In this document: in pieces, positions 3,909 to 40,715 of the stretch
Numbering within the stretch: position 1 is the first letter of the stretch
Layout of the letters: every line of letters starts with the position of its first letter
NCBI RefSeq assembly: GCF_006345805.1
Contig: NW_021831984.1
Span: 1-41,311 of the forward strand
DNA: 41,311 nt
Direction: 5' to 3'
Origin: Octopus sinensis
Lineage: Eukaryota
Notes under the pieces: generated by a model
What the model was told of the DNA's origin: nothing
Databases searched by the model: none
What the model saw: the letters and a program-made list of their open reading frames with translations, nothing else
Program-made: the position numbers and the translations under genes

Positions 3909-4275
3909 TTACCAACCACATGGTTCTGGGTTCAGTCCCACTGTGTGGCAGGCATTTTGGGCAAGTGTCTTCTACTATACCCTCGGGCTGACCAAAGCCT
4001 TGTGAGTGGATTTGGTAGACGGAAACTGAAAGAAGTCCGGTATGTATGTATGTTTGTTTGTGTGTCTGTGTTTGTCTCCCCTCCCCAGCATCGCTTGACA
4101 ACCAATGCTGGTATGTTTACGTGCCCGTAACTTAGCGGTTGGGCAAAATAGACCGATAGAATAAGTACTAGGCTTACAAAGAATAAGTCCTGGAGTCGGT
4201 TTGCTCGACTAAAGGCGGTGCTCCCACATGGCCGCAGCCAAATGACTGAAACAAGAAAAGAGAGTAAAGAGTAAT
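3909..4275 (+). mobile_element. SINE family B
   Basis: ACCACATGGTTCTGGGTTCAGTCCCACTG, GGGCAAGTGTCTTCTACTATA core, central (GTAT)n and GACTGAAACAAG..AAAGAG tail. Confidence 0.9.
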
Positions 4276-4353
4276 ACTCGCAAATGAACGCCAATAGAGT
4301 AACAGTAGAATGTAAAGAAGATTTTATGTAAGGTAAAAAGAATGTCAAGATCA

Positions 4354-4760
4354 TCTTTATATATAAAAGTAAGGTTGCGTGCCTGTCTCCTACGATTTAG
4401 ATTCCTAACTACTCCCACATTTTGCGGTGCAGTTTAACCAAAACCGGGTATCTTATAGTCGTGATTCATATCGAGCCCTTCTAGGTATTAGCGAGCGTCT
4501 ACGATGAGTCTACGATTAGTCTACGATTTAAAAAAAAATTTACCATATTTTTTTCCATTTTAATGCATTTTTTCGCGATTATATAAGGGAAGTAACTCTC
4601 TAAAAATGTCTACGATGAGTCGACGATTTTAAAAAAATTACCATAATTTTTTTTCCATTTTTAATGCATTTTTTTTGCTATTTTTTGGCTATAACTCTCT
4701 AAAAATGCTTATATAGTTATTTCCCTTACAAACCCGAGCAACACCGGGCGATACTGCTAG
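4354..4760 (+). mobile_element. Non-autonomous Helitron
   Basis: Inserted between A4353 and T4761; begins TC, ends CTAG; CCCG-N8-CGGG hairpin at 4733-4748 just before the 3' end; homologous copies at 13204 and 38940. Confidence 0.85.
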
Positions 4761-7871: not shown

Positions 7872-8280
7872 GGCATAGGAGTGGATGTGTGGTAAGTCGC
7901 TTGCTAACGAAATCACATAGCTCAGGGTTCAGTCCCACTGCGTGAAACCTTGGGCAAGTGTCTACAACTATAGCCGCGGGCCGACCAAAGCCTTATGAGT
8001 GGATTTGGTAGACGGAAACTGAAAGAAGCCCGTCGTATATATGTATATATATATGTATGTATGTGTGTGTATATGTTTGTGTGTCTGTGTTTGTCCCCCC
8101 AACATCGCTTGACAACCGATGCTGGTGTGTTTACATCCCCGTAACTTTGCGGTTCGGCAAAAGAGATCGATAGAAAAAGTAGTAGGCTTACAAAGAATAA
8201 GTCCTGGAGTCGATATGCTCGACTAAAGTCGGTGCTCCAGCATGGTCACAGTCAAATGACTGAAACAAGTAAAAAGAGAA
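7872..8280 (+). mobile_element. SINE family B, full length
   Basis: GGCATAGGAGTGGATGTGTGGTAAG head through GACTGAAACAAGTAAAAAGAG tail. Confidence 0.92.
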
Positions 8281-9027: not shown

Positions 9028-9697
9028 TTATAAAAACATGCAGTTTGTGATTGTATCAGATCTATAAGTTCTGATAGTTTTTTTTAGTCCTCTTTGGCAA
9101 CCACAGGTGCTCATGCCATGTAAGTTGAGAGAGGGTCCATTTGTGGGCCCATCACCAGACTTTGGTGTCTGGAAGTGCTTCACAATATTTTGGGTGGGTA
9201 TTAATTTGTAATAATGCTCAAGTGGAGTTTCGAAGTAAGTGTATGACTGTAATTCTGAAAGGCGGCGAGCTGGCAGTAACGTTAGCACGCCGGGCGAAAT
9301 GCGTAGTCGTATTTCGTCTGCTATTACGTTCTGAGTTCAAATTCCGCTGAGGTCGACTAGCCTTTCATCCTTTCGGGGTCGATAAATTAAGCACCAGTTA
9401 CGCACTGGGGTGGGGGGTCGATGTAATCGACTTAATCCGTTTGTCTGTCCTTGTTTGTCCCCTCTGTGTTTAGCCCCTTGTGGGCAATAAAAAAATATAT
9501 AACTGTAAATCTGAGGGTGCATCATTGAGTCGTGAGGGGAACAGTATGGTCCAGGGTACACCCTTAGCGACGGGCATGTCCAGGTAACACATTACTGTTT
9601 TTGACGGCTTAAAGTGATGCCCTACAATTTGAAGGTCTCCTTCTTGAATCACCATATATTTGTAACGCAAAACTTGACTTGTCCCCATTAAACTCAA
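9028..9697 (-). pseudogene. Unidentified ~137-codon reading frame interrupted by a SINE
   Basis: ORFs 9470-9697 and 9028-9288 join in frame (SDLQ/SELQ) once the SINE and one TSD copy are removed. Product not recognised. Confidence 0.3.
9261..9501 (+). mobile_element. SINE family A, full length
   Basis: GGCGGCGAGCTGGCAG head to A-rich tail; TSD ACTGTAATTCTGA / ACTGTAAATCTGA at 9246-9258 and 9502-9514. Confidence 0.93.
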
Positions 9698-10015
9698 TTC
9701 TTTTCTGATATATTAATGGTGAGCGAAAATGCGCCTTACAATCTATCTAGAATGGTTAGAGTATCGCTCAACGCTAATCAGTACGCCCAGCTCTTCTTAC
9801 ACACAACATCGGTCTTCTAGGGTTTACAGCCTTCTCATACAATTTTTGCAGATGTTAGCATTCATAGATTCCTGAGAACGTTGATACCATGTGCCTTGCT
9901 GGTGCAACAGGGTCTGAAAAGGCCATTGTATCTTTCTCTCTCATTCTACAGAACAACAAAGGGTGTGTGTATGCTTGCGTGTGTGTGCGTGTATGCATGT
10001 GTGAATAATGCACGT

Positions 10016-10092
10016 ATATATTTATGTATGTATATATATATATATATATAAATAAATGTATATATTTATATATGCATGTATGTATACATACA

Positions 10093-10128
<36 letters not shown>

Positions 10129-10196
10129 GTATATATATATATATTATATATATATATGTATATATATGTATATATATATATGTATATATATATATG

Positions 10197-10251
<55 letters not shown>

Positions 10252-10279
10252 GTATATATATATATGTATATATATATAG

Positions 10280-10314
<35 letters not shown>

Positions 10315-10318
10315 TATA

Positions 10319-10368
<50 letters not shown>

Positions 10369-10376
10369 ATATATAA
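10016..10376. repeat. (TA)n-rich compound microsatellite
   Basis: About 360 bp of TA with interspersed TG; source of the YI-rich pseudo-ORFs. Confidence 0.95.
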
Positions 10377-15190: not shown

Positions 15191-15460
15191 GTGGGAGCAC
15201 AACATATGGTGAAGTGATTAGTGTTTCGAATAACAGCAGTTCTATTTTTCTAAAGTCTGCGACCATCTGGCCATCTGCAGAAGACGTTAGGGTGCCACTG
15301 TTTGGATGAGAAGATTGTGGTGGAGAGGTGAGGGCTGTGGAGGTGTGTTGTGTTGGTGGTGTGGTGCTATTGAGGCAGTTGTTGGTCCACAAACAACCAT
15401 TGGAACACAGATTCCTGTCAAAACTTTCTATGCAGCAAGAGAGAGAGAGAGAGGGAGAGA

Positions 15461-16072
15461 GGCGATATGGAATTTCGTTTGACTGACGACGGAGAAGGAT
15501 GAAGGACGGGAGAGTTTGTGGAGATAAGATGAGAGAAGAGGTGTGGGAAGAGGAAGTGAGAGAGAGAGAGAGAGACGGACAGACAGACAGACAGACAGAG
15601 AGAGAGAGGGAGAGGCGATATGGAATTTCGTTTGACTGACGACGGAGAAGGATGAAGGACGGGAGAGTTTGTGGAGATAAGATGAGAGAAGAGGTGTGGG
15701 AAGAGGAAGTGAGAGAGAGAGAGAGAGAGAGACGGACAGACAGACAGAAGAGAGAGAGGAGAGAGAGGAGAGGCGATAGGGATTTCGTTGACTGACGACG
15801 GAGAAGGATGAAGGACGGGAGAGTTTGTGGAGATAAGATGAGAAGAGAGGATGTGGAAGAGGAAGTGAGAGAGAGAGAGAGAGACGGACAGACAGACAGA
15901 CAGAAGCGAGAGAGAGAGAGAGAGAGAGACGATATGGAATTTCGTTTGACTGACGACGGAGAAGGATGAAGGACGGGAGAGTTTGTGGAGATAAGATGAG
16001 GGAAGAGGTGTTGGAAGAGGAAGTGAGAGAGAGAGAGGAGAGAGAGAGACGGACAGAGAGAGAGAGAGAGAC

Positions 16073-16103
<31 letters not shown>

Positions 16104-16250
16104 CGATATGGAATTTCGTTTGACTGACGACGGAGAAGGTTGAAGGACGGGAGAGTTTGTGGAGATAAGATGAGGGAAGAGGTGTAGGAAGAGGAAGAGG
16201 GAGAGAGACAGAGAGAGACAGACAGACAGACAGAGAGAGGGGGGAGATAG
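15461..16250. repeat. Minisatellite, 5 units of ~153-174 bp
   Basis: A ~95-bp core (G.CGATATGGAATTTCGTTTGACTGACGACGGAGAAGG...) starts at 15461, 15614, 15772, 15928 and 16102, each followed by variable (GA)n/(GACA)n. Confidence 0.92.
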
Positions 16251-16913: not shown

Positions 16914-17121
16914 AAGCAATAAAGGGTTAGCAACGAATTGCCTTACCACATACCGAATTTAGAAATAGCAGTCAAAGGGTTATATCTCAGTAAAAACAGC
17001 AATTGCTGTTTTTACTGAGATCTCCCTTTTATTAGTAGAAGAAATAGCTATAAACCCTTTGACTGCTATTTCTAAATTCGGTATGTGGTAAGGCAATTCG
17101 TTGCTAAACCCTTTATTGCTT
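16914..17121. repeat. Foldback inverted repeat with a 38-bp perfect central palindrome
   Basis: Arms 16914-16984 and 17049-17121; perfect palindrome at 16984-17021. Confidence 0.95.
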
Positions 17122-17860: not shown

Positions 17861-18501
17861 CGACCACATGGTTCCGGATTCAGTCCCACTGCGTGGCACG
17901 TTGGGCAAGTGTCTTCTACTATAGCCTCGGACCGACCAAACCCTCGTGAGTGGATTTGGTAGACGGAAACTGAAAGGCGGCGAGCTGGCAGAAACCTTAG
18001 CACGCCGGGCGAAATGCTTAGCGGTATTTCGTCTGCCGTTACATTCTGAGTTCAAATCCCGCCGAGGTCGACTTTACCTTTCATCCTTTCGGGGTCGATA
18101 AATTAAGTACCAGTTACGCACTGGGGTCGATGTAATCGACTTAATCCGTTTGTCTGTCCTTGTTTGTCCGCTCTGTGTTTACCCCTTGTGGGTAATAAAG
18201 AAATAGGTATTTCGTCTGCCGTTACATTCTGAGTTCAAATCCCGCCGAGGTCGACTTTACCTTTCATCCTTTCGGGGTCGATAAATTAAGTACCAGTTAC
18301 GCACTGGGGTCGATGTAATCGACTTAATCGCTTTGTCTGTCCTTGTTTGTCCCCTCTGTGTCTAGCTCCTTGTAGGCAGTAAAGAAATAGGAAACTGAAA
18401 GAAGCCCGTTGTATGTATGTATGTATGTATATGTATATATTTATGTGTGTGGTTGTCCCCCACCCCCAACATCGCTTGACAACCGATGTTGGTGTGTTTA
18501 C
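17861..18501 (+). mobile_element. SINE family B interrupted by a family A dimer
   Basis: B head/core at 17861-17975 resumes at 18390 with GGAAACTGAAAGAAGCCCG. Confidence 0.85.
17976..18389 (+). mobile_element. SINE family A, tandem dimer
   Basis: Full unit plus a headless second unit from ~18206; 12-bp TSD GGAAACTGAAAG at 17965-17976 and 18390-18401. Confidence 0.92.
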
Positions 18502-19076: not shown

Positions 19077-19242
19077 GTGTGTGGTAAGTAGCTTGCTTAC
19101 CAGCCATGGTTCCAGGTTCATCCCACTGCGTGGCACCTTGGGCAAGTGTTTCTACTATAGCCTCGGGCTGACCAAAGCCTTGTGAGTGGATTTGGTAGAC
19201 GGAAGCTGAAAGAAGCTCGTCGTTTATTATATATATATATAG

Positions 19243-19301
<59 letters not shown>

Positions 19302-19511
19302 TGTATGTATGTATGTATGTATGTATGTATGTATACACATATATATGTGTTTTCCCCCCTCCATCGCTTGGACAACCGATGCTGGTGTGTTTGCGTCTCG
19401 TAACTTGGCGGTTCGACAAAAGTGAATGATTGAATATGCATCAGGCTTACAAACAGTAAGTTCTGGGGTCGATTTGCTCGACTAAAATGGCGCTGCTCCA
19501 GCATGGCCGCA
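19077..19511 (+). mobile_element. SINE family B
   Basis: Standard head, core, central (TA)/(GTAT)n and tail to CAGCATGGCCGCAG. Confidence 0.88.
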
Positions 19512-19648
19512 GATCTACTGTATGTAAGTAGATATATATATATGTGTGTGTGTGTGTGTGTATGTGTATATGTGTATGTATGTCTCTGTGTAATGGATGT
19601 ATGTATGTGCGAGTGAGTATGTCATGGTACAAAGACATATATATATAT

Positions 19649-21361: not shown

Positions 21362-21595
21362 ATTTGTGTGTGTGAGTGCGTGTGTGTTTGTGTGAGTGTG
21401 CGTATTTGTGTGTATATGCGGATGCGTGTGTATATGTATACATATACATATACATATGCATGCATATGCACATGTATATATATATATATAATATACTCAT
21501 AAACACGCACGCAACATATATACGTACATATATTATATATATATATAATATATATATATATAATATATATATATATTATATGTATATATATATAT

Positions 21596-21652
<57 letters not shown>

Positions 21653-21691
21653 ATATATATATATATTATATATAATATATATATGTCTGTG

Positions 21692-21736
<45 letters not shown>

Positions 21737-22241
21737 TATATATATTATTATATATAATATTTATATATATAGTATATTATATATTATTATATTATAATAT
21801 TATATATTATACATAACACACACACACATATATATATTATATTATCTATAATTATATATATTATACATAAACACACCACACACAATATATATATATTGTA
21901 TATATATATATATATAATATATATATATATATATAGAATATATATATATTATACATGCACACTCATACACATATATATTTGTGACTGTTTCTCAAAATAC
22001 AACAGATTCTATTTTTGTGCAACAGAATACTTTCATCCTATAATAGAGTACAGAGACTGCGAGTGAAAACAAGCCAGAATACATTTCTGTTTGTGGAGTT
22101 TCACTAATGTGTAAAACATATGATTCAAACGCATTGAGCCTTGCAGTGAAAACCGTTGAGTGTATTCCTTTGTGTGAGTGTGCGTGTGAGTGTGCGTGCG
22201 TGCGTGATACAATTATATAAATAAAGAAATGACCTGATATA

Positions 22242-22293
<52 letters not shown>

Positions 22294-22354
22294 AGTATAT
22301 AAGTATATACATATATATACTATATATATGTATATATATATATATATGTATATG

Positions 22355-22393
<39 letters not shown>

Positions 22394-22422
22394 AGTATAT
22401 ATATATATGTAAGTATATATAC

Positions 22423-22454
<32 letters not shown>

Positions 22455-22496
22455 GAGATATATATATATATATATATGTACGTATATATATATAAT

Positions 22497-22533
<37 letters not shown>

Positions 22534-22635
22534 ATTATGTAAGTATATACATATATATAGGTTGTTTCATTATTTCTATAATTGTATCACGCGCAAACAT
22601 AATATACATACATATACATTTATATATATATATCT

Positions 22636-22667
<32 letters not shown>

Positions 22668-22800
22668 ATATACATATATATACACACACATATACATATA
22701 TATATATATATACACACACACACATATATACAATATAATCTATATATATATATATTATATCTATATAAGATATATATTATATATATATGTATGTATGTAT
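21150..22800. repeat. Large compound (CA)n/(TG)n/(TA)n microsatellite field
   Basis: Direct inspection; one unique island at ~21975-22230. Confidence 0.9.
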
Positions 22801-22965
22801 GATACATATGTGATGAGATGAAAGTGTTTGGTATAAGCTATGGAACTTTAAGGTGAAACTAAGTCAAATTGTTATTAAATACATGAAATTCTAACCAAAT
22901 GTGTTGGAATTACATGACTTTCGTTTGCTCACGTACTGATGTGTGTATGGGTGTATGTGTGCCTC

Positions 22966-26063: not shown

Positions 26064-26082
26064 CACACACCATATATAATAT

Positions 26083-26117
<35 letters not shown>

Positions 26118-26159
26118 ATAATATATATATATATATGTATGTATATATATATATGTATG

Positions 26160-26190
<31 letters not shown>

Positions 26191-26481
26191 ATATATATAT
26201 ATATATGTATGTATGATATATATATATGTATGTATATATATATATATGTATGTATGTATATATATATATATATGTATAAGTATATACATACATATGTATA
26301 TATATGTGTGTCTTTGTGTGTGTTTTGGTGTGTTAATGAACATATATCAAACACATGCATGCATGAACACACATATACTGTGTTGTATACGTATACATGT
26401 ATACATATACATATACATATACATGTGTGTGTATACATATGCATGTATTTATATTTGTGTGAATGTGTGTATATATATACA

Positions 26482-26523
<42 letters not shown>

Positions 26524-26650
26524 TATATACATACATATATCTATACCTATATATATATATACAACATATATATAATATACATAATATATATATATATATA
26601 CATTATATATATAAAGTATGTACATACATATATATATATAAAGTATGTAC
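26030..26650. repeat. (CA)n/(TA)n/(TATG)n compound microsatellite
   Basis: Direct inspection. Confidence 0.9.
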
Positions 26651-27789: not shown

Positions 27790-28011
27790 TGTATGTACAT
27801 ATATAATATATAATATATATATATAATTATATATAATTATATATATTATATACAATATATATATACATATATATATATAATATATATATATATAATATAT
27901 ATACATATATATATACATTATATATATACATATATACAATATATATATACACACAATATATATATATATATACACAATATAATATATACAATATATATAT
28001 ACAATATATAT

Positions 28012-28043
<32 letters not shown>

Positions 28044-28118
28044 ACAATATATATATATACAATATATTATACATATATATATACAATATATAAAACAATT
28101 ATATTATATATATATATA
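27790..28118. repeat. (TA)n-rich microsatellite
   Basis: Direct inspection. Confidence 0.92.
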
Positions 28119-29636: not shown

Positions 29637-30393
29637 TTATTTGTTGTGCCTATATTTTCAACCAAGCTAGATGTCCTTAATTTGAGAGGGATTTGACTGC
29701 TATTTCTAGCAGGTTAAATAGTCACGCAAGAGACCGGTGCTCTTCGGTGACTATTGTATACATGCTGTTTCGGTTGATCGGTATTTTGTCATGTCCCCAT
29801 CATGTTATGAAATCATATGCTGCCATGGTCGACTGTACAAATACCAGCCGCATAATCATATTTGATCAATAATAATAGTCCTTTCTACTATAGGCACAAG
29901 GCTGAATTTCGGGGAGGAACCTCAGAACAGAAGGCATATATGGTTGCCAAGTAGAGAAATGATGAAGGCAATTCAACCTCAATCCATCTATAAATACCTT
30001 GGAATACTTGAAGCAGATGGAATCAAACACAATGACATGAAAGAAAAGACAAAAAGAGAGTACCTGCGGAGAGTGAGAAATATATTGGCTTCAAAGCTAA
30101 ATGCCCGAGGCATGATTTCGGCTTTAAACTTACGCGCAGGTGCAGTAGTTCGGTATGGCACAGGGACCCTGAATGGGAATAGAAGAGGAACTAAAGCAGA
30201 CGGACAGGAAGTCAAGAAAGTTTCTAACCATGCATGGAGCCCATCATCTACGTGCAGACACTGATCGCCTATACATGAAGAGAGCAAATGGAAGAAAAGG
30301 ATTGATAAGTGTAGGAGACTGTTTGCATATCGAACTGGAGAGCTTAATGAGATACCTAGCCCAAAGTAAGGAAACCTTGCTTGTAACAGTTAA

Positions 30394-30785
30394 GTTAATT
30401 TTTTTGGCTCAAAAAGCAAAAAGCAAGGCCATGTAGGGGGACATGGAGTTATGTACAGGGAGGGTGTTCATGCAAAGAGTTCAGGCTATTTCTGGTCAAG
30501 AGAGACTTTGAACCGAGCGGTCGTCGGCATCTTCACTATCTCGTCCGGCAGCTTATTCCACGGATCCGCAACCCGGACGGAGAAAGCTCTTCTCCTTCGA
30601 TTGAGATGAAATCGTCGCAGATAGAGTTTTTCGGAGTGACCCCGCAGCCAAAGCTCTGGAGCAGGAGTGAAGAACAGCTCTTTCGAGAGGTTACACTTTC
30701 CGCTTATGATGTTGTGAGCAAGAATGAGATCGCCACGGCGTCGTCGTTTTTCTAGAGAATAAAGGTCGAGCGTCTTCAGCCTTTC
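30394..30785 (-). mobile_element. CR1-clade LINE 3' fragment inserted in the R4-like LINE
   Basis: ERLKTLDLYSLEKRRRRGDLILAHNII...RGHSEKL...FSVRVADPWNKLP is the typical CR1/L2 ORF2 C-terminus, followed by a short 3' UTR. Confidence 0.85.
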
Positions 30786-31311
30786 TGGAATAATGAAAGC
30801 AAAGAATAAAAAGGTATAATAAAGGAAGAAGTGCAAAAAGGACATGATGAAGACGTATACAGCCACACGAGAACTTGCGAGGTAGGATTGGCTGATGTAA
30901 GGAACACTAAAAACAGAGACCGAGAGTACTAAACTGGCAGCGCAAGACCAAACTTTGGGCATGAACTGGCGGGTCAATCTTAGGAATGAGCAAGTGTCTC
31001 CGTTGTGCCGCATCTGCAACAGAGTGGATGAAACCATTGCTCATATCACGAACGAATGCCCTAGACTTGTCCAAAACCACAACTTGTGGTGATACGATCA
31101 GGTAGCGGAAGTGCTACAATAGATACTGTGTGAAAAGTGGGGGCTGGAGAGAGGCAAGACGTGGTATGAGCAGATACTGCAGAGAGTGGGGGAGTTGGAG
31201 GCTAGCAAAATCCTCTAGAATTTCCCAATCCAAACAGATCAGGCACTAGAGCATAACAAACCGGACCTAATAGTGTTGGAGAAGGTGCACCACATATGCT
31301 ATATAGTTGAT

Positions 31312-31531: not shown

Positions 31532-31950
31532 TATATAGTTGATGATGCATTCCCCTTTAATCCATGAATAGTCGAGAAAGAAGGCGAAGAAGAAGTACGT
31601 GGAACAAATAGGGGCTACAATAAAGGTGGAGCACTTGCAGAAAACAGCACCGCTTGGAACCTTAACTATGAAATAATCCGGCTATGGATTATTTCCATTT
31701 ATGCCATTTATTGTTGGGTTCTTGAGAACAGTATCAGAAGTATCAAGGAGAATATGAAGGAAATTGGAATAGAGTGTCCAGTAGAACTGTTACAAAACGT
31801 TTGTCTCTATGGCACGGCCAGAATAATCAGGTAAATATTAGAAAGCTGAAAAGAATGGATAACATTTTACCATAGGCTGAGGGTAGCAAGCCCGTTACGC
31901 ATGTAAGACTACAGGAGCACAAACAAATGAGAAATAATAATAACAAACAT

Positions 31951-32112
31951 TTCAACTATAGTTACAAGGGCTGAAAACTTGGGGGAGGAGGATGGTCGTT
32001 TACATCGACTCCAGTGTTTCACTGGTATTTAATTTATCGACCCCGAAAGGATGAAGGGCAAAGTCGACCTCGGTGGAATTTGAACTCACTACGTAGCGGT
32101 GGAAGAAATACC
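31951..32112 (-). mobile_element. SINE family A, 5'-truncated
   Basis: Reverse complement of GGTATTTC...GAGTTCAAATTCCACCGAGGTCGAC...TCATCCTTTCGGGGTCGATAAATTAAATACCAG. Confidence 0.85.
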
Positions 32113-32120
32113 TGTTCCAT

Positions 32121-32314
32121 GGAACAGGTACTTAAAAATATGCATGTCTTTTATTCTTCGAGTTTAAAATGAGACATTGCAGGCATAATTTCGTAATATC
32201 TATACTCCAGAATCCAAGGAAATAGCCGAAGTGAAATGTCTCGACATTGGCGAGTTATAATGAAAGATTGGCCTGAGACATATTTCGGTATAACTCGACA
32301 AAATCAAGACACTT
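32121..32314 (-). repeat. Inverted partial copy of the 277-bp repeat at 36622-37105
   Basis: Reverse complement of ~36781-36970 (e.g. TTATTCTTCGAGTTTAAAATGAGACATTGC vs GCAATGTCTCATTTTAAACTTGAAGAATAA). Confidence 0.9.
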
Positions 32315-35171
32315 ATATCCGCCAATCTCCGGCTATCCCCGCCAATTACCGCCCATCTCCGCCAATTTCCTCAAATTTCCGTAAATCTCCGCCAATCTCC
32401 GCCCATATACGCCATCTTCGCCAATCTCATTCTCTCCCACTCTCCCATGTGTTTTAACACCCAGCAGTATTGGGAAATCTCACAAAATGCTATTCAACAT
32501 ATCTCCGGCAATCTCTGGTAATCTCCGCCAACCTCAACCTATCTCCGCATATCTCCGTCAATCTCTGCCAATCTCCGCCTATCTCAGCCTATCTCACTCT
32601 GCCTCAGCCTATCCCACTCAGCCTCCGCTTATCACTCTCTATCTCCGCCTATCTCACTCTATCTCCGCCTATCTCACTCTATCTCACTCTACCTTACTCT
32701 CACCCAGGTGTTTTACCACACAGCATAATTGGTAAATCTCACAAAATGCTATTCCGCCAACCTACGAATATCTCCGGCTATCTCCGGCAATCTACGGAAA
32801 TCTCCGGCAATGTCCGGCTATAGTCGGCTATCTCCGGAAAACTCCGGGAAACTCCGGCAATCTCCGTTAAACTCCGGCAATCTCCGGTAATCTCCGGCAA
32901 ACTCCGGCAATCTCTGGAAAACTCCACCGCTCTCCGGCAAACTCTGTCAAACTCCGGCAAACTCCGCCATTCTCATTCTATCTCCGCCTTTCGCCGCCAA
33001 TGTCACTCTATCTCCGCCTATTTCATTCTATCTACGCCTATCTCACTCTATCCCCGCCTATCTCACTCTAACACCGCCTATCTTCCTCACTCTCTCCCAA
33101 GTGTTTTAACCCCGACATTATTGGGAAATTTCCCAAAATGCTATTCCGTCTATCTCCGGCAATCTCCGGATATCTCCGCCAATCTCCGCCTATCTCCACC
33201 TATCTCACTCTATCTCCGCCTATCTCACTGTATCTCTGCCTATCTCACTCTGTCGCCGTCTATCTCAACAATCTATCTCCGCCTATCTCACTCTATCTCC
33301 GCTTATCTCACTCTATCTCACCCACTCCCAGGTGTTTTAACACCCAGCATTATTGGGAAATCTCCCAAAATGCTATTCCGCCAATCTCCGAATGTCTCCG
33401 GCTATCTCCAGTAATCTCCGGTTATCTCCGAGCTATTTCCGGCAATCTCCAGCAATCTCCGGCAAACTTCGGCAATCTCCGGTACTTTCCGGTAATCTCC
33501 GGCAATTTCGGGAGATAGCCGGAGATTACCGTAGATTGCCGGAGATTGTCGGAGATTGCCGGAGATAGCGGAGATTGGCGGAATCGCATTTTGGGAGATT
33601 TCCCAATAATGCTGGGTGTTAAAACACCTGGGAGAGAGTGAGATAGAGAGAGATAGACGGAGATAGAGTGAGATAGGCGGAGATAGGCGGATATAGGTGG
33701 AGATAGAGATAGGCGGAGATTGGCGAAGATTGGTGGAGATTCCCAGAGATTGACGGAGTTTGCCGGAGATTTCCGGAGTTTGCTGGAGATTGCCGGAGAT
33801 TGCCGAAGATTTCCGGAGATTACCGGAGATTGCCGGAGATTACCGGGGATATCCGGAAATTGTCAGAGGTAGCTGGAGATTGCCGGAGATTGCCAGAGAT
33901 TGCCGAAGATTCCTGGAGATAGCCGGCGATAAACGGAGGTAGCCGGATATTAGTGGAATAGCATTTGGGGAGATTCCCCAATAATGCTGGGTGTTAAAAC
34001 ACCTGGGAGATAGTGAGATAGAGTTTGATAGGCGGAGATTGAGTGGAGATTGGCGGAGATAAAAGGAAATAGAGTGAAACTGGCGGAGTTTGCCGGAGTT
34101 TGCCTGAGATTGGAGGAGTTTACCAGAAATGGGCGGAGATTGCGGGAGATTGCCGGAGTTTGTCGGAGTTTACCGGAGATTGACGAAGTTTGCCGGAGAT
34201 GGCCGGAGATGGCCGGAGATAGCGGAGTTCGGTGGAATCGCATTTTGGGAGATTTCCCTATAATGCTGGGTGTTAAAAGTCCTTGGAGAGACTGAGATAG
34301 ATTGAGATAGAGTGAGATAGACAGAGATAGAGAGAGATAGGCGGAGATAGATTGAGATAAGCGGAGGTAAGAGATAGGCTGACATAGACTGAGATGGGTG
34401 GCGATAGAGTGAGATACGCGGAGATAGAGTGAGATTGGCGGAGTTGGCCGGAGATTGCGGAGATTGCCGGAGATTGCCGGAGATCACCCAAGATGGCCGG
34501 AGATAGCCGGAGATTGCCGGAGAAATCTGTTGATAGCCGGCGATTGCCAAAGATTGCCGGAGATAGCGGAGATTGTCGGAATCGCATTTTGGGATATTTC
34601 CCAATGTTTGGTGTTAAATAGCTTGGAGAGAGGGAGATAGGCGGAGATAAACGGAGATTGTAGGAGATTGGCGGAGATAGGCGAAGATTGCCTGAGATTG
34701 GAGGACATTGCCGGAGATTGCCGTAGATATGCATAATAGTATTTTGGGAGATTTCCCAATGATGCTGGGTTTTAAAACACCTGGGAGAGAGGGACAGTGT
34801 GAGATTGGTGGAGATTGGCGTAGATGGGCGGAGAGTGGCGGAAATATGCGGAGATAGGCGGAGATAGAGTGAGATTGGTTGAGACAGAGTGTGATAGGCG
34901 GAGATAGAGTGAGATAGGCGGAGATAGAGTGAGATAGGCGAAGACATAATGAGATTGGCGGAGTAGCATTTTGGGAGATTTCCCAATAAGGCATGGTGTT
35001 AAAACACCTTGAAGAGAGTGAGATAAGTGGAGATAGACTGATATCGGTTGATATAGATTGAGATAGGCGGAGATAGAGTGATATGGGCGGAGATAGTTGG
35101 AGATAGAGTGAGATTGGCGGAGTTTGCTGGAGCTTGCCGGAAATTGGCGGAGTTTACCGGAGATATCGGGA

Positions 35172-35212
35172 GGTTAGGGTTAGGGCAATGTTATGGTTAG
35201 GGTTAATGTTAA
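35172..35212 (+). repeat. Short degenerate (TTAGGG)n tract
   Basis: GGTTAGGGTTAGGGCAATGTTATGGTTAGGGTTAATGTTAA. Confidence 0.75.
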
Positions 35213-35427
35213 TTTACGGTAATTTCCGGTAATCTCCGGTGATTTCCGGCAATTTCCGGTCATCTTCGGCAACTTCCGGCAATCTCAGGAAATTTCTGGA
35301 AATTACCGGAGATTACCGGAAATCACCGGAAATGAGCGAAATTGCTGGAAATTACCGGAAATTACCGGAAGGTACCGGAATTGCCTGAGATTACCGGAAA
35401 TTACCGGATATTTCCGGAAATTGCCGT

Positions 35428-35839
35428 AAACCCTGACCCTAACCCTAACTTTAACCATAACCCTAATCTTAATTCTAATACTAACCCTAACCGTAACCCT
35501 AACCATAACCCTAACCCTATCCCTAACCCTAATTCTAACCCTAACCCTAACCCTAACCCCAATTCTCACCCTAATCCTAAACCTAAACCTAACCCTAACC
35601 CTAACCCCAATTCTAACCCTGACCCTAACCCTAAGCCTAACCCTAATTCTAACCCTAACCCTAACACTAACCCTAACCCTAATTCTAACCCTAATCCTAA
35701 CCCTAAAACTAAACCCTATCCCTAACCCTAACCCTAACCCGACCCCTAACCCGAACCCTACCTCTAAACCTAAACCTAACCATAACCCTAACCCTAAACC
35801 TTACCCTAAACCTTACCCTAACCGCTAACCCTAACTCTA
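35428..35839 (-). repeat. Degenerate interstitial telomere-like array, ~68 hexamers of CCCTAA and variants
   Basis: CCCTAA with TTCTAA, CCATAA and CCTAAA variants; TTAGGG is the usual molluscan telomere repeat. Confidence 0.9.
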
Positions 35840-36621
35840 TTTCCACCAATCTCAGCCTATCTCCGCCAATCTCTGCCAATCTCCGGCAATCTCCGTGAAT
35901 CTCACTCTATCTCCGCCTATCCCCCTCTCCCTCAGGTGTTTTAACACCAAACATTATTGGGAAATCTCCCAAAATGCTATTCCGCCTATCTCCGGCGATC
36001 TCCGGTAATCTCCGGCAATCTCCGCCTATCTCCGCCTATCTCACACTATCTCCGCCTATCTCAATCTATCTTCACCTATCTCACTCTATCTCAGCCTCTC
36101 TCAATCTACCTCCGCCTATCTCACTCTATCTCTGCCTATCTCACTCTATCTCACTCCATCTCACTCTCTCCCAGGTGTTTTAACACCCAGCATTATTGGG
36201 AAATATCCCAAAATGCGATTCTGCCAATCTCCGGCTATCTCCGGCAATCTACGCCAATCTACGCCAATCTCAACCTATCTCCGCCTATCTCCGCCAATCT
36301 CTGCCAATCTCCGCCTATCTCACTCTGTCTCCGTCTCTCTCACTCTATCTCCGTATCTCACTCTCTCCCAGGTGTATGAACACCCAGCATTCTTGGGAAA
36401 TCTCCCAAAATGCTATTCTGCCTATCTCCGACAATCTCCACCAATCTCACTCTGTCTCCGCCTATCTCACTCTATCTCCACGAATCTCCGCCAATCTCAC
36501 TCTATCTCCGCCTATCTCAATCTCTCCCAGGTGTTTTAACACCCAGCATTATTGGGAAATCTCCCAAAATGCTATTCCGCCTATCTCCACCTATCTCCGC
36601 ATATCTCCGCCAATCTCCGCC

Positions 36622-37105
36622 TATTACGAAATTATGCCAGCAATGTCTCATTTTAAACTTGAAGAATAAAAGACTTGCATATTTTTAAGTACCTATTCCG
36701 TGTGTTCATGTAAAATCCGCAAATGTCCAAGCAAAAAAACGGAATCGATTTGTCCTTTGCTTCCTCGAAAAATCCCGGTGAAGTGTTTTGATTTTGTCGA
36801 GTTATACCGAAAGATGTCTTCGGCCAATCTTTCGATATATCTCGACAAGGTTGAGGCATTTCACTTCGGCTATTTCCTTGGATTCTGGAGTATATAGATA
36901 TTACGAAATTATACCAGTAGTGTCTCATTTTAAACTTGAAGAATAAAAGACTTGCATATTTGTTCTTACCTGTTTCTTACCTGTGTATGTAAAATCCGTA
37001 AAGTTTCAAGAAGAAAGCAGAAGAAGACACTTGCTTCCCCGGAAATACCCGAAATGAAGAGTTTTGATTTTGTCGACATATATCGAAACAATGCTATCGA
37101 GCACT
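36622..37105 (+). repeat. 277-bp tandem repeat, ~1.7 units
   Basis: TATTACGAAATTAT starts at 36622 and 36899; GTTTTGATTTTGTCGA recurs at ~36785 and ~37061. Confidence 0.88.
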
Positions 37106-37139
37106 TATATGTTCAGCTCAGGAACAAGTGTTACCGTCC

Positions 37140-37350
37140 GACTATATGGAGAGCAGAATAGACAACATTACCGATTGTGACAAACTTAGAATCTGTGGTG
37201 AGGTGCATGAAGCGTAAAGCATGTCATCAGTGAATGACCGAAATTGGCGCAATGTGATTACAAATGAAGCCAAGACTTTGTGGCGAGAATGATGCATTGA
37301 GAGCTGTGTGGAAAGCACGGCCTACAATGTGCCATGGTTTGTATATGAGA
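37140..37350 (+). mobile_element. Possible decayed R4-like LINE fragment
   Basis: WKARPTMCHGLYMRKLQE loosely resembles the W..K.MHGQY segment of R4-type ORFs. Confidence 0.2.
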
Positions 37351-37402
37351 AAACTCCAGGAGTATATGTATGTATATATGTATATATATATGATATATAT
37401 TA

Positions 37403-37477
<75 letters not shown>

Positions 37478-37478
37478 C

Positions 37479-37512
<34 letters not shown>

Positions 37513-38939: not shown

Positions 38940-39331
38940 CTAGCAGTATCACCCGGCGTTGCTCGGGTTTGTAAGGGAAGTAAAATATGTAAGAATTTAG
39001 AGATGTAAAGTATAATAGCCATCTCAATATGGCTAACCACAAGGGGGGGGGTTACTGTAGCTTTTTACGTCTGGATTTAATAATTACATTTTTAGAGAGT
39101 TACTTCCCTATATAAACCGAGGAAAATGCATTAAAAATACGGAAAAATTATGGTAATTTTTTTTTTTAATCGTAGACTCATCGTAGACGCGCGCTAATAC
39201 CCAGAAGAGCTCGATATGAATCACGACTATAAGATACCCGGTTTTGGTTAAACTGCACCGCAAAATGTGGGAGTAGTTAGGAATCTAAATCGTAGGAGAC
39301 AGACACACAACTTCACTTTTATATATAAAGA
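38940..39331 (-). mobile_element. Non-autonomous Helitron
   Basis: A|TC...CCCGAGCAACGCCGGG hairpin...CTAG|T on the minus strand; homologous to the 4354 and 13204 copies. Confidence 0.87.
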
Positions 39332-39377
39332 TTTCATTCCTTACTTTCACCATTCCTGCTTTTATACTCTCTTTTTT

Positions 39378-39613
39378 ACTCTTTTACTTGTTTCAGTCAT
39401 TTGACTGCGGCCATGCTGGAGCACCGCCTTTAGTCGAACAAATCGACCCCGGGACTTATTCTTTTTGTAAGCCCAGTACTTATTCTCCCGCTCTCTTTTG
39501 CCGAACCACTAAGTGACGGCGACGTAAACACACCAGCATCGGTTGTCATGCAATGCTAGGGGGACAAAAACAGACACACAAAACACACACACAACACACC
39601 TACACACACACAC

Positions 39614-40014: not shown

Positions 40015-40206
40015 GGCGTAGGAGTAGCTGCGTGGTAAGTAGCATGTTTACCAACCACATGGTTCCGGGTTCAGTCCCACAGCGTGGCACCTTGGGCAAG
40101 TGTCTTCTACTATAGCTTCGGGCTGACCAAAACCTTGTGAGTGGATTTGGTAGGCGGAAACTGAAAGAAGGCCGTCGTATATATATGTATATATATATAT
40201 ATATGT

Positions 40207-40256
<50 letters not shown>

Positions 40257-40469
40257 TGTTTATGTTTGTTTGTCCCAACATCGCTTGATAACTGATGCTG
40301 GTGCGTTTACGTCCCCGTAACTTAGCGGTTCGGCAAAAGACACCGATAGAATAAGCACTACTAGGCTTACAAAGAATAAGTCCTGGGGTCGGTTTTTTTC
40401 GACTAAAGGCAGTGCTCCAGCATGGCCTCTGTCAAATGACTGAAACAAGTAAAAGAGTAAAAGAGTAAA
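40015..40469 (+). mobile_element. SINE family B, full length
   Basis: GGCGTAGGAGTAGCTGCGTGGTAAG head to (AAAAGAGT)n tail. Confidence 0.92.
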
Positions 40470-40715
40470 TGACTGCTAGGCTTCGGGCATAGGTAAGTGA
40501 CAGCAAACACCTAGATTTATTTGAATGGTATTAAGTATAAAGCGAAAAAGAGAAGGCTCACCCTCCGGATTATTGATCGGTTTACAGTCTGGAACAATTC
40601 TTCAATCTCTGACCTATTTTCGAGAACCCCAATCACGAAAAACACTTGAAGGTCATTTGCTCAGAACCTCAGTTTAAAGCATACTGTGTAAAGGTATCTA
40701 GGTTAACTCACTAAA

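What the first reader, a model, noticed from the sequence alone, without database searches (positions are those of the whole stretch)
32109..37105. 5-kb compound foldback: 10-bp satellite, two inversion centres, inverted 277-bp flanks
Seen: inverted 277-bp-repeat fragment, C-rich 10-mer array, inversion centre at ~33510, G-rich array, short TTAGGG tract, quasi-palindromic 10-mer core centred at ~35292, long CCCTAA tract, C-rich array, then 1.7 units of the 277-bp repeat. It is CCGG-dense and far more GC-rich than the rest of the window. Known: Drosophila FB foldback elements have long inverted arms built of short tandem subrepeats including 10-mers. Inference: an undescribed modular foldback transposon or satellite, or the scar of breakage-fusion cycles.
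Basis: partly seen in the sequence, partly recalled or inferred. Interest (0 to 1): 0.8.

Follow-up and report, generated by a model that had tools for sequence, protein, structure and literature searches.

The report
Inverted satellite block around telomere repeats
A 5-kb stretch of an octopus chromosome is a non-coding satellite whose blocks switch strand several times around a decayed internal telomere-repeat tract, most likely through hairpin (fold-back) repair of broken DNA rather than through a transposon.

Summary
The region 32109-37105 contains about 255 ten-base units and 14 copies of a 57-60-bp module. It also holds a 68-unit degenerate CCCTAA tract, a tiny TTAGGG tract, and inverted copies of a ~275-bp repeat at both edges. 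CCGG is ten times denser than in the rest of the window.

Spacer-less centres lie at 33505-33510 and 35287-35297. A 22-bp perfect palindrome sits on the left edge, and the strand also flips across each telomeric tract.

The host is an octopus, where TTAGGG is the telomere motif.

Tests for a foldback transposon fail:
- No target-site duplication.
- Outer ends fall at different positions of the 275-bp unit.
- No protein domain.
- Flanks are inverted, which an insertion cannot produce.

The telomere/10-mer junction occurs in both arms, so a single telomeric tract was duplicated in inverted form. Two telomeres did not fuse.

The arms are 72-88% identical, so the structure is old and not a read artefact.

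Best reading: a composite satellite with an internal telomeric tract, reshaped by fold-back inverted duplications at self-complementary CCGG 10-mers. Copy number and chromosomal position could not be tested.

The parts
31995..32111 (-). 5'-truncated SINE copy abutting the left edge (context; marks a non-homologous junction)
   Evidence: Matches seven other SINE copies in the window at 78-86%. The other copies continue at least 30 nt further 5'.
32109..32130 (.). 22-bp perfect palindrome TACCTGTTCCA|TGGAACAGGTA on the outer left edge
   Evidence: One of only four non-simple palindromes with arms of 9 nt or more in 41 kb. Its right half belongs to the 275-bp unit. Four nt of its left half belong to the SINE.
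32118..32314 (-). Inverted ~200-bp fragment of the ~275-bp repeat
   Evidence: BLAST to 36781-36974 at 88% over 194 bp and to 36625-36702 at 94% over 78 bp.
32315..33505 (+). Satellite block 1: four modules (32440, 32703, 33092, 33325) plus 10-mer runs, C-rich strand
33505..33511 (.). Inversion centre 1, no spacer, inside a run of CCGG-type 10-mers
   Evidence: 40/50 ungapped complementary at centre 33505 or 33510. The inner module pair and its flanks reach about 93-95% identity.
33511..35165 (-). Satellite block 2: six modules (33577, 33955, 34234, 34577, 34735, 34957), G-rich on the + strand
35173..35211 (+). Short degenerate TTAGGG tract (about 6 units)
   Evidence: Aligns with the start of the long tract in reverse complement.
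35212..35426 (.). 215-bp palindrome of CCGG+A/T 10-mers (TAATTTCCGG / CCGGAAATTA), centre 35287-35297
   Evidence: CCGG density is 65/kb. The telomere-adjacent unit carries the same ACGG variant in both arms.
35429..35839 (-). Interstitial telomeric tract: 68 hexamers read as CCCTAA on the + strand, 32 perfect
35840..36624 (+). Satellite block 3: four modules (35933, 36166, 36363, 36522)
36625..37095 (+). ~275-bp repeat, 1.7 tandem units (units 78% alike)

Best explanation
This is an immobile, non-coding composite satellite in an octopus genome, with an embedded and decaying telomeric tract.

The repeat unit is 159-390 bp long. It starts with a 57-60-bp module that contains two adjacent palindromes. 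Runs of 10-mers follow, in the order CCGG type, CGCC type, then alternating CGCC/CACT.

The CCGG-type 10-mer is 60-80% self-complementary. A broken or stalled end inside such a run can snap back on itself, prime synthesis and be copied into a spacer-less inverted duplication. Repeated events of this kind, as in breakage-fusion-bridge cycles, would turn a segment [satellite-(TTAGGG)n-10-mer array] into the present mosaic of blocks on alternating strands.

Shown:
- The anatomy.
- The spacer-less centres inside CCGG runs.
- The same telomere/10-mer junction in both arms.
- The edge palindrome.
- Arm divergence of 12-28%.

Inferred:
- The fold-back mechanism.
- The order of events.
- The idea that the starting segment was a chromosome end (satellite capped by telomere repeats) joined to a broken array. 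I put this sub-claim at about 0.4.

I expect no present function beyond possible heterochromatin or fragility.
For: - Tandem, variable-length units with 14 modules fall in three blocks of alternating strand.
- Both main centres lie inside CCGG-type runs and have no unique spacer: 40/50 and 38/50 ungapped complementary bases.
- Centre 2 lies in the most self-complementary variant, CCGGAAATTA against CCGGTAATTT, 8/10.
- A third perfect palindrome, with 11-nt arms, sits exactly where the 275-bp copy meets a 5'-truncated SINE.
- The junction TTTACGG(T/C)AATTTCCGG between the telomeric tract and the 10-mers occurs once on each arm, with the same rare ACGG variant. One tract was therefore duplicated in inverted form.
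- Array orientation relative to the telomeric tracts is mirrored: satellite(-) then TTAGGG on the left, CCCTAA then satellite(+) then 275-bp repeat on the right.
- TTAGGG is the cephalopod telomere motif (PMC13218726). The window is octopus DNA.
- Experimental precedent exists. Telomerase-deficient Chlamydomonas shows subtelomeric satellite arrays fused head to head, and multiple inverted repeats there are read as successive BFB cycles (bioRxiv 10.1101/2023.01.23.525193).
Against: - Units do not pair in mirror order across the centres, and identities (66-84%) do not cluster by arm. A simple one-step palindrome is therefore not recoverable.
- Re-inverting 32315-33510 does not restore symmetry with the right arm.
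- The 275-bp/array junctions differ on the two sides.
- Four nt of the edge palindrome come from the SINE, so only 7 nt are certainly an inverted copy.
- Whether this satellite is subtelomeric anywhere in octopus is unknown.
- Ectopic recombination between inverted arrays could also flip blocks.
Confidence: 0.55

Rival explanations
1. A rearranged, non-autonomous foldback-type DNA transposon, or several nested ones. Its long arms are built of subrepeats that carry multiple transposase-binding modules, as in Drosophila FB, Galileo or Tetris.
For: - Arms are made of 10-mers and 20-mers.
- A ~275-bp tandem repeat in inverted orientation lies at both extremes (88-94% identity). This recalls the Tetris layout of flanking domain, ~220-bp tandem repeats and middle domain (PMC4079207).
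- The conserved double-palindrome module repeated 14 times could be a protein-binding site.
- Chimeric Galileo copies also lack matching TSDs (PMC3573991).
Against: - No target-site duplication. The only 8-mer match among 27,900 end pairs is at chance level, and it has no matching termini.
- The outer ends fall at different positions of the 275-bp unit (about 78 against about 190).
- The right-hand repeat runs about 120 bp beyond the inverted homology.
- The telomeric flanks of the inner foldback, and the 275-bp flanks of the whole, are inverted. A cut-and-paste insertion cannot produce that.
- No protein domain.
- No second copy in 56 kb of octopus DNA on hand.
Confidence: 0.2
2. The scar of an end-to-end fusion of two ancestral chromosomes. 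This would be a 'fusion ITS' like human 2q13, with two subtelomeres facing each other.
For: - Head-to-head polarity is correct: TTAGGG on the left, CCCTAA on the right.
- The satellite is mirrored on both sides.
- Fusion ITSs are an accepted class (PMC6410037).
Against: - The two tracts do not abut. A 215-bp 10-mer palindrome separates them.
- The tract/10-mer junction is the same in both arms, so the left 40-bp tract is a copy of the right one, not a second telomere.
- A further strand flip at 33505-33510 and the left 275-bp copy are not explained.
Confidence: 0.1
3. An assembly or read artefact, such as a foldback read, a hairpin contig through a telomere, or a mis-join in low-complexity sequence.
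For: - Palindromic, low-complexity, telomere-containing sequence is hard to assemble.
- Foldback reads can tangle assembly graphs (PMC12870357).
Against: - Artefact foldbacks are nearly perfectly palindromic (PMC12870357). Here the arms are 72-88% identical and differ in length and unit number, for example 40 bp against 410 bp of telomere repeat.
- The outer flanks are not mirror images of each other.
- The region contains no N run.
Confidence: 0.05

Closest known systems
Foldback transposons (Drosophila FB; Galileo, P superfamily; Tetris of D. virilis)
   Same: Kilobase inverted arms are built of short tandem subrepeats. A longer (~220-275 bp) tandem repeat lies in the outer part of the arms, there is no coding capacity, and the structure is strongly plastic (PMC4079207, PMC3573991).
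   Different: There are no shared terminal sequences and no TSD, and the flanks are inverted. There are five strand changes instead of one loop, and telomeric repeats lie inside. Dispersed copies have not been demonstrated.
Head-to-head subtelomeric arrays produced by breakage-fusion-bridge cycles in telomerase-deficient Chlamydomonas (Sultan arrays)
   Same: Satellite arrays are joined in inverted orientation, multiple inverted repeats are read as successive cycles, and the junctions are later internalised (10.1101/2023.01.23.525193).
   Different: Those events are recent, seen in culture, and have identical arms. This one is fixed in a germline assembly with arms 12-28% diverged, and it retains a telomeric tract.
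Fusion-type and subtelomeric interstitial telomeric sequences (human 2q13-q14; degenerate TTAGGG islands inside subtelomeres)
   Same: A degenerate internal (TTAGGG)n tract a few hundred bp long has head-to-head polarity and repeat-rich inverted flanks (PMC6410037).
   Different: Here a single ancestral tract was duplicated in inverted form, and a 10-mer palindrome lies between the two copies. Synteny evidence is lacking.
Fold-back inverted duplications (inv-dup-del) and palindromic amplification seeded by short inverted repeats (own knowledge of the human and yeast literature)
   Same: The centres are spacer-less or near spacer-less and lie at short self-complementary sequence.
   Different: The seeding repeat here is itself the unit of a satellite, so every CCGG run is a potential centre.

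Membership tests
Foldback (FB-like) DNA transposon | Long inverted arms made of short tandem subrepeats | tested here: met
   10-mer and 20-mer arrays in opposite orientation.
Foldback (FB-like) DNA transposon | Both arms end in the same terminal sequence (true TIR ends) | tested here: not met
   The left end lies at unit position ~78 and the right end at ~190 of the 275-bp repeat. No 20-nt terminal match exists at the real edges.
Foldback (FB-like) DNA transposon | Target-site duplication of 7-10 bp | tested here: not met
   One 8-mer match among 27,900 end pairs, where 0.4 is expected by chance, and it lies at non-matching termini.
Foldback (FB-like) DNA transposon | Multiple dispersed copies; transposase in some copies | not testable with these tools
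   No octopus genome collection is on hand. There is no other copy in the window or in L003 and no Pfam domain in this copy.
Fusion ITS (ancestral telomere-telomere fusion) | Head-to-head polarity, 5'-(TTAGGG)n ... (CCCTAA)m-3' | tested here: met
Fusion ITS (ancestral telomere-telomere fusion) | Two independent telomeric tracts that abut | tested here: not met
   A 215-bp palindrome lies between them, and both arms share the same tract/10-mer junction.
Fusion ITS (ancestral telomere-telomere fusion) | Position at a synteny break between ancestral chromosomes | not testable with these tools
   The chromosomal position of the window is unknown.
Fold-back inverted duplication / BFB product | Inverted arms meeting with little or no spacer at short self-complementary sequence | tested here: met
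   Centres at 33505-33510 and 35287-35297, plus the edge palindrome 32109-32130.
Fold-back inverted duplication / BFB product | Arms collinear in mirror order | tested here: inconclusive
   Order is mirrored for telomere tract, 10-mers and first module. Unit identities show no mirror pairing further out.
Satellite DNA with higher-order unit | Head-to-tail units sharing a consensus | tested here: met
   14 modules with 86% mean column identity at spacings of 158-389 bp.
Satellite DNA with higher-order unit | Long arrays / high genomic abundance | not testable with these tools
   Only this 4.3-kb block is visible.
Long-read foldback artefact | Nearly perfect palindrome mapping to one place on both strands | tested here: not met
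   Arms are 72-88% identical and unequal in length. The criterion is taken from PMC12870357.

The most novel reading that the evidence does not exclude
The block is the sequence-level relic of chromosome-end instability in the octopod germline. A telomere-capped subtelomeric satellite fused to a broken end and then passed through breakage-fusion-bridge cycles. It marks, or lies beside, one of the fusions or rearrangements that shaped the octopus karyotype. The 57-60-bp module would then be a probe for octopus subtelomeres and for other such scars.
Probability: 0.12. Interest if true: 0.75.

Novelty: new member of a known kind. Interest (0 to 1): 0.35.

Why it matters
If the reading is right, this is a compact natural record of how hairpin-prone short repeats turn a chromosome-end-like segment into nested inverted duplications. 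It would be kept in a cephalopod germline long enough for the arms to diverge by 12-28%.

It gives three concrete probes: the module, the CCGG 10-mer and the 275-bp unit. These can be used to ask what octopus subtelomeres look like and whether similar scars sit at karyotype breakpoints.

It is also a warning for annotation. The block looks like a foldback transposon but fails the tests that define one.

Tried and rejected
1. Searching for other copies through spurious ORFs.
   - The 237-aa repeat ORF gave no hit among 5.8 billion proteins.
   - A 154-aa ORF from another interspersed repeat also gave none.
   - Exact look-ups of two window ORFs found nothing.
   - The protein collection evidently holds no six-frame ORFs of this genome, so these negatives say nothing about copy number.
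2. DNA pattern scans with the module core.
   - Metagenomes gave 2 single hits inside unrelated bacterial-looking sequence.
   - Prokaryotic genomes gave 8 single hits, about the number expected by chance (my estimate is about 4).
   - Viral contigs gave 0 hits.
   - The 10-mer dimer hit one GC-rich viral contig with 3.5 copies and no module, which is a coincidence.
3. Rfam and tRNA scans of the window found nothing.
4. Pfam on ten ORFs in and around the block gave only sub-threshold chance matches.
5. Structure conservation in the module. Its two hairpins are strong in the consensus (-13.2 kcal/mol, z -6.1). The 14 copies show no compensatory change and no more pairing than shuffles, so there is no evidence of selection on a fold.
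6. Unit phylogeny. No mirror-order pairs and no arm-specific clusters appeared.
7. Telomeric tract. No higher-order period was found.
8. 10-mer substitution spectrum. Transitions at the CpG are only mildly raised, which is not informative on methylation.
9. Empty-site test. The flanking SINE is not split by the block, and the right flank carries no SINE 5' part.
10. Simple one-inversion model. Re-inverting 32315-33510 does not restore a symmetric palindrome (reasoned).
11. Literature. No paper on octopus satellites, foldback elements or interstitial telomeric sequences was found.
Full report
**What is there**

Reading 31800-37500, Tandem Repeats Finder, a BLAST of the module and a greedy tiling with the 10-mer types all give the same map. 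I call the C-rich orientation '+'.

| Coordinates | Feature |
|---|---|
| 32118-32314 | Inverted fragment of a ~275-bp repeat |
| 32315-33505 | Array (+), four modules |
| 33505-33510 | Strand flip |
| 33511-35165 | Array (-), six modules |
| 35173-35211 | About six degenerate TTAGGG units |
| 35212-35426 | 215-bp palindrome of CCGG+A/T 10-mers |
| 35429-35839 | 68 CCCTAA units, 32 of them perfect |
| 35840-36624 | Array (+), four modules |
| 36625-~37095 | 1.7 units of the ~275-bp repeat |

About 255 ten-base units were recognised: 130 of CCGG/CGCCA type, 61 of CGCCT type and 64 of CACT type.

**The repeat unit**

The array is not a plain 10-bp satellite. Its unit begins with a 57-60-bp module, consensus CTCTCCCAGGTGTTTTAACACCCAGCATTATTGGGAAATCTCCCAAAATGCTATTCCGCC. 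The 14 copies have 86% mean column identity. After the module come CCGG-type 10-mers, then CGCC-type 10-mers, then alternating CGCC/CACT 20-mers. Module spacing varies from 158 to 389 bp.

**Composition and uniqueness**

- CCGG density is 15.4/kb against 1.6/kb in the rest of the window.
- GC is 46.7% against 36.6%. This is a clear but not extreme difference, since other 1-kb windows reach 0.50.
- No part of the block recurs elsewhere in the window.
- The telomeric tract is the only one in the window, with 38 pattern hits against 0 in shuffles.

**More strand changes than reported**

- Each centre can be placed only to within 5-nt steps, because the CCGG-type 10-mer is itself 60-80% self-complementary. 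Neither centre has a unique spacer.
- The 10-mer orientation also flips across each telomeric tract: array(-), TTAGGG, 10-mers(+), centre, 10-mers(-), CCCTAA, array(+).
- A 22-bp perfect palindrome, TACCTGTTCCA|TGGAACAGGTA, sits exactly on the left edge at 32109-32130. It is one of only four non-simple palindromes with arms of 9 nt or more in the whole 41 kb.
- The right half of that palindrome is the end of the inverted 275-bp copy. Four nt of its left half belong to a SINE copy (31995-32111, minus strand) that is 5'-truncated relative to other copies in the window.

**Host**

- A LINE-derived ORF at 30486-31037 (minus strand) is 86% identical to a protein encoded on Octopus vulgaris chromosome OX597823.1 of GCA_951406725.2.
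- The window shares many interspersed repeats at 72-93% identity with that locus.
- TTAGGG is the only experimentally determined cephalopod telomere motif (PMC13218726).
- The hexamer tracts are therefore telomere-type repeats of this host, now internal. At least 32 kb of ordinary repeat-rich DNA lies on one side and 4 kb on the other.

**History readable from the sequence**

- The palindrome around 35287-35297 includes the junction between the telomeric tract and the 10-mers. Both arms read (TTAGGG-like)...TTTACGG(T/C)AATTTCCGG, and the ACGG variant occurs there and nowhere else in that context.
- One ancestral segment [array(-)-(TTAGGG)n-10-mers(+)] was therefore copied in inverted form. The 40-bp left tract is a shrunken copy of the 410-bp right tract, or the reverse. 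It is not a second telomere.
- That ancestral segment already had 10-mers of opposite polarity on the two sides of the telomeric tract.
  - This is what a telomere joined to a break inside another array would give.
  - It is not what telomerase-mediated insertion into one array would give.
- Around centre 1 the inner module pair and its neighbours are about 93-95% identical. The match then decays, and the left arm has six more CCGG units.
- Across all 14 units, identity is 66-84%, with no mirror-order pairing and no arm-specific clustering.
- The inverted 275-bp copies are 88-94% identical, whereas the two tandem units on the right are only 78% alike.
- The structure is therefore old, has kept turning over, and cannot be reduced to one clean event.

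**Mechanism proposed**

Every spacer-less centre lies in, or is made of, short self-complementary sequence. This is the signature of fold-back repair. A broken or stalled end snaps back on itself, primes synthesis, and replication of the hairpin yields an inverted duplication without a spacer.

Repetition of such events, with breaks nearby, is the breakage-fusion-bridge pattern. The same kind of anatomy has been watched forming in telomerase-deficient Chlamydomonas. There, subtelomeric satellite arrays fuse head to head, and multiple inverted repeats are read as successive cycles (10.1101/2023.01.23.525193).

The anatomy is shown. The mechanism and the chromosome-end origin are inferred.

**Why not a foldback transposon**

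Foldback elements are recognised by four features: long arms of subrepeats, common terminal sequences, 7-10-bp target-site duplications, and multiple copies (PMC4079207; PMC3573991). Only the first is met here.

- The outer ends fall at different positions of the 275-bp unit.
- The right-hand repeat continues about 120 bp past the inverted homology.
- The only 8-mer shared by candidate flanks is at chance level and has no matching termini.
- No ORF in or beside the block has a protein domain.
- The flanks of the inner palindrome (telomeric tracts) and of the whole block (275-bp copies) are inverted relative to each other. A cut-and-paste insertion cannot create that.
- A badly rearranged copy cannot be excluded without a genome-wide census, so I keep this rival at 0.2.

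**Why not a classical fusion ITS, and why not an artefact**

Polarity is right for a head-to-head fusion (PMC6410037). However, the tracts do not abut, and they share one junction, so they derive from one tract.

Foldback read artefacts are nearly perfect palindromes (PMC12870357). Here the arms are 72-88% identical and unequal in length. The outer flanks are not mirror images.

**The module**

The consensus folds as two adjacent DNA hairpins (-13.2 kcal/mol, z -6.1). The 14 copies show no compensatory changes and no more pairing than column shuffles. The palindromes are therefore a property of the consensus, possibly a protein-binding site. Selection on a fold is not demonstrated.

**Limits**

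No collection of cephalopod DNA was available. Protein-based and pattern-based searches for other copies were uninformative. Copy number, chromosomal position, orthologous loci and read support remain untested. These decide between the readings.

**Verdict**

The transposon reading is not supported. The satellite and breakage-scar reading is the best supported. The block is a new member of known kinds, namely an ITS-bearing satellite and a fold-back inverted duplication. It is of moderate interest until it is placed on a chromosome.

Noticed in passing
window 16920-17115: A ~196-bp hairpin element. Inverted termini of ~62 bp (TAAAGGGTTAGCAACGAATTGCC...) enclose a 38-bp perfect palindrome at 16984-17021. 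It looks like a MITE or a small foldback and is unrelated in sequence to the finding.
   Followed up: partly
window 18023-18391: Tandem duplication (183 bp x 2, 95% identity) of the tRNA-like SINE that is scattered through the window. Other copies include those at 9309, 29474, 31360, 31995, 40764 and 40981.
   Followed up: no
window 15438-16239: A 153/174-bp tandem repeat of about 5 copies, each carrying long (GA)n tracts. It lies in the most purine-skewed part of the window (GC skew +0.64).
   Followed up: no
window 29866-31040: Fragments of two LINE-like elements on opposite strands. The ORF at 30486-31037(-) is 86% identical to an O. vulgaris protein (P0001), which identified the host. No Pfam domain was detected in the fragments.
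   Followed up: partly
window 3935-4396, 7925-8245, 19121-19621, 39289-39513, 40051-40475: Five copies of another interspersed repeat of 450 bp or more, sharing peptides such as [24 protein letters not shown]. It is also present twice in the O. vulgaris locus L003. It has no match in the protein collection.
   Followed up: partly
window 10015-10375, 21516-21953, 22237-22809, 26072-26640, 27799-28118: Very long impure (TA)n tracts of 320-570 bp, and (TAGA)n/(CTAT)n tracts up to 280 bp. They dominate the low-GC parts of the window.
   Followed up: no
L012 504-537: A GC-rich viral contig (IMGVR_UViG_3300024433_000001) carries 3.5 copies of CAATCTCCGG, the same 10-mer as the octopus array. There is no module and nothing else in common, so I judge it a coincidence.
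   Followed up: yes
window 31670-31695: A short perfect hairpin, GAAATAATCC-GGCTAT-GGATTATTTC, lies 420 bp left of the block.
   Followed up: no
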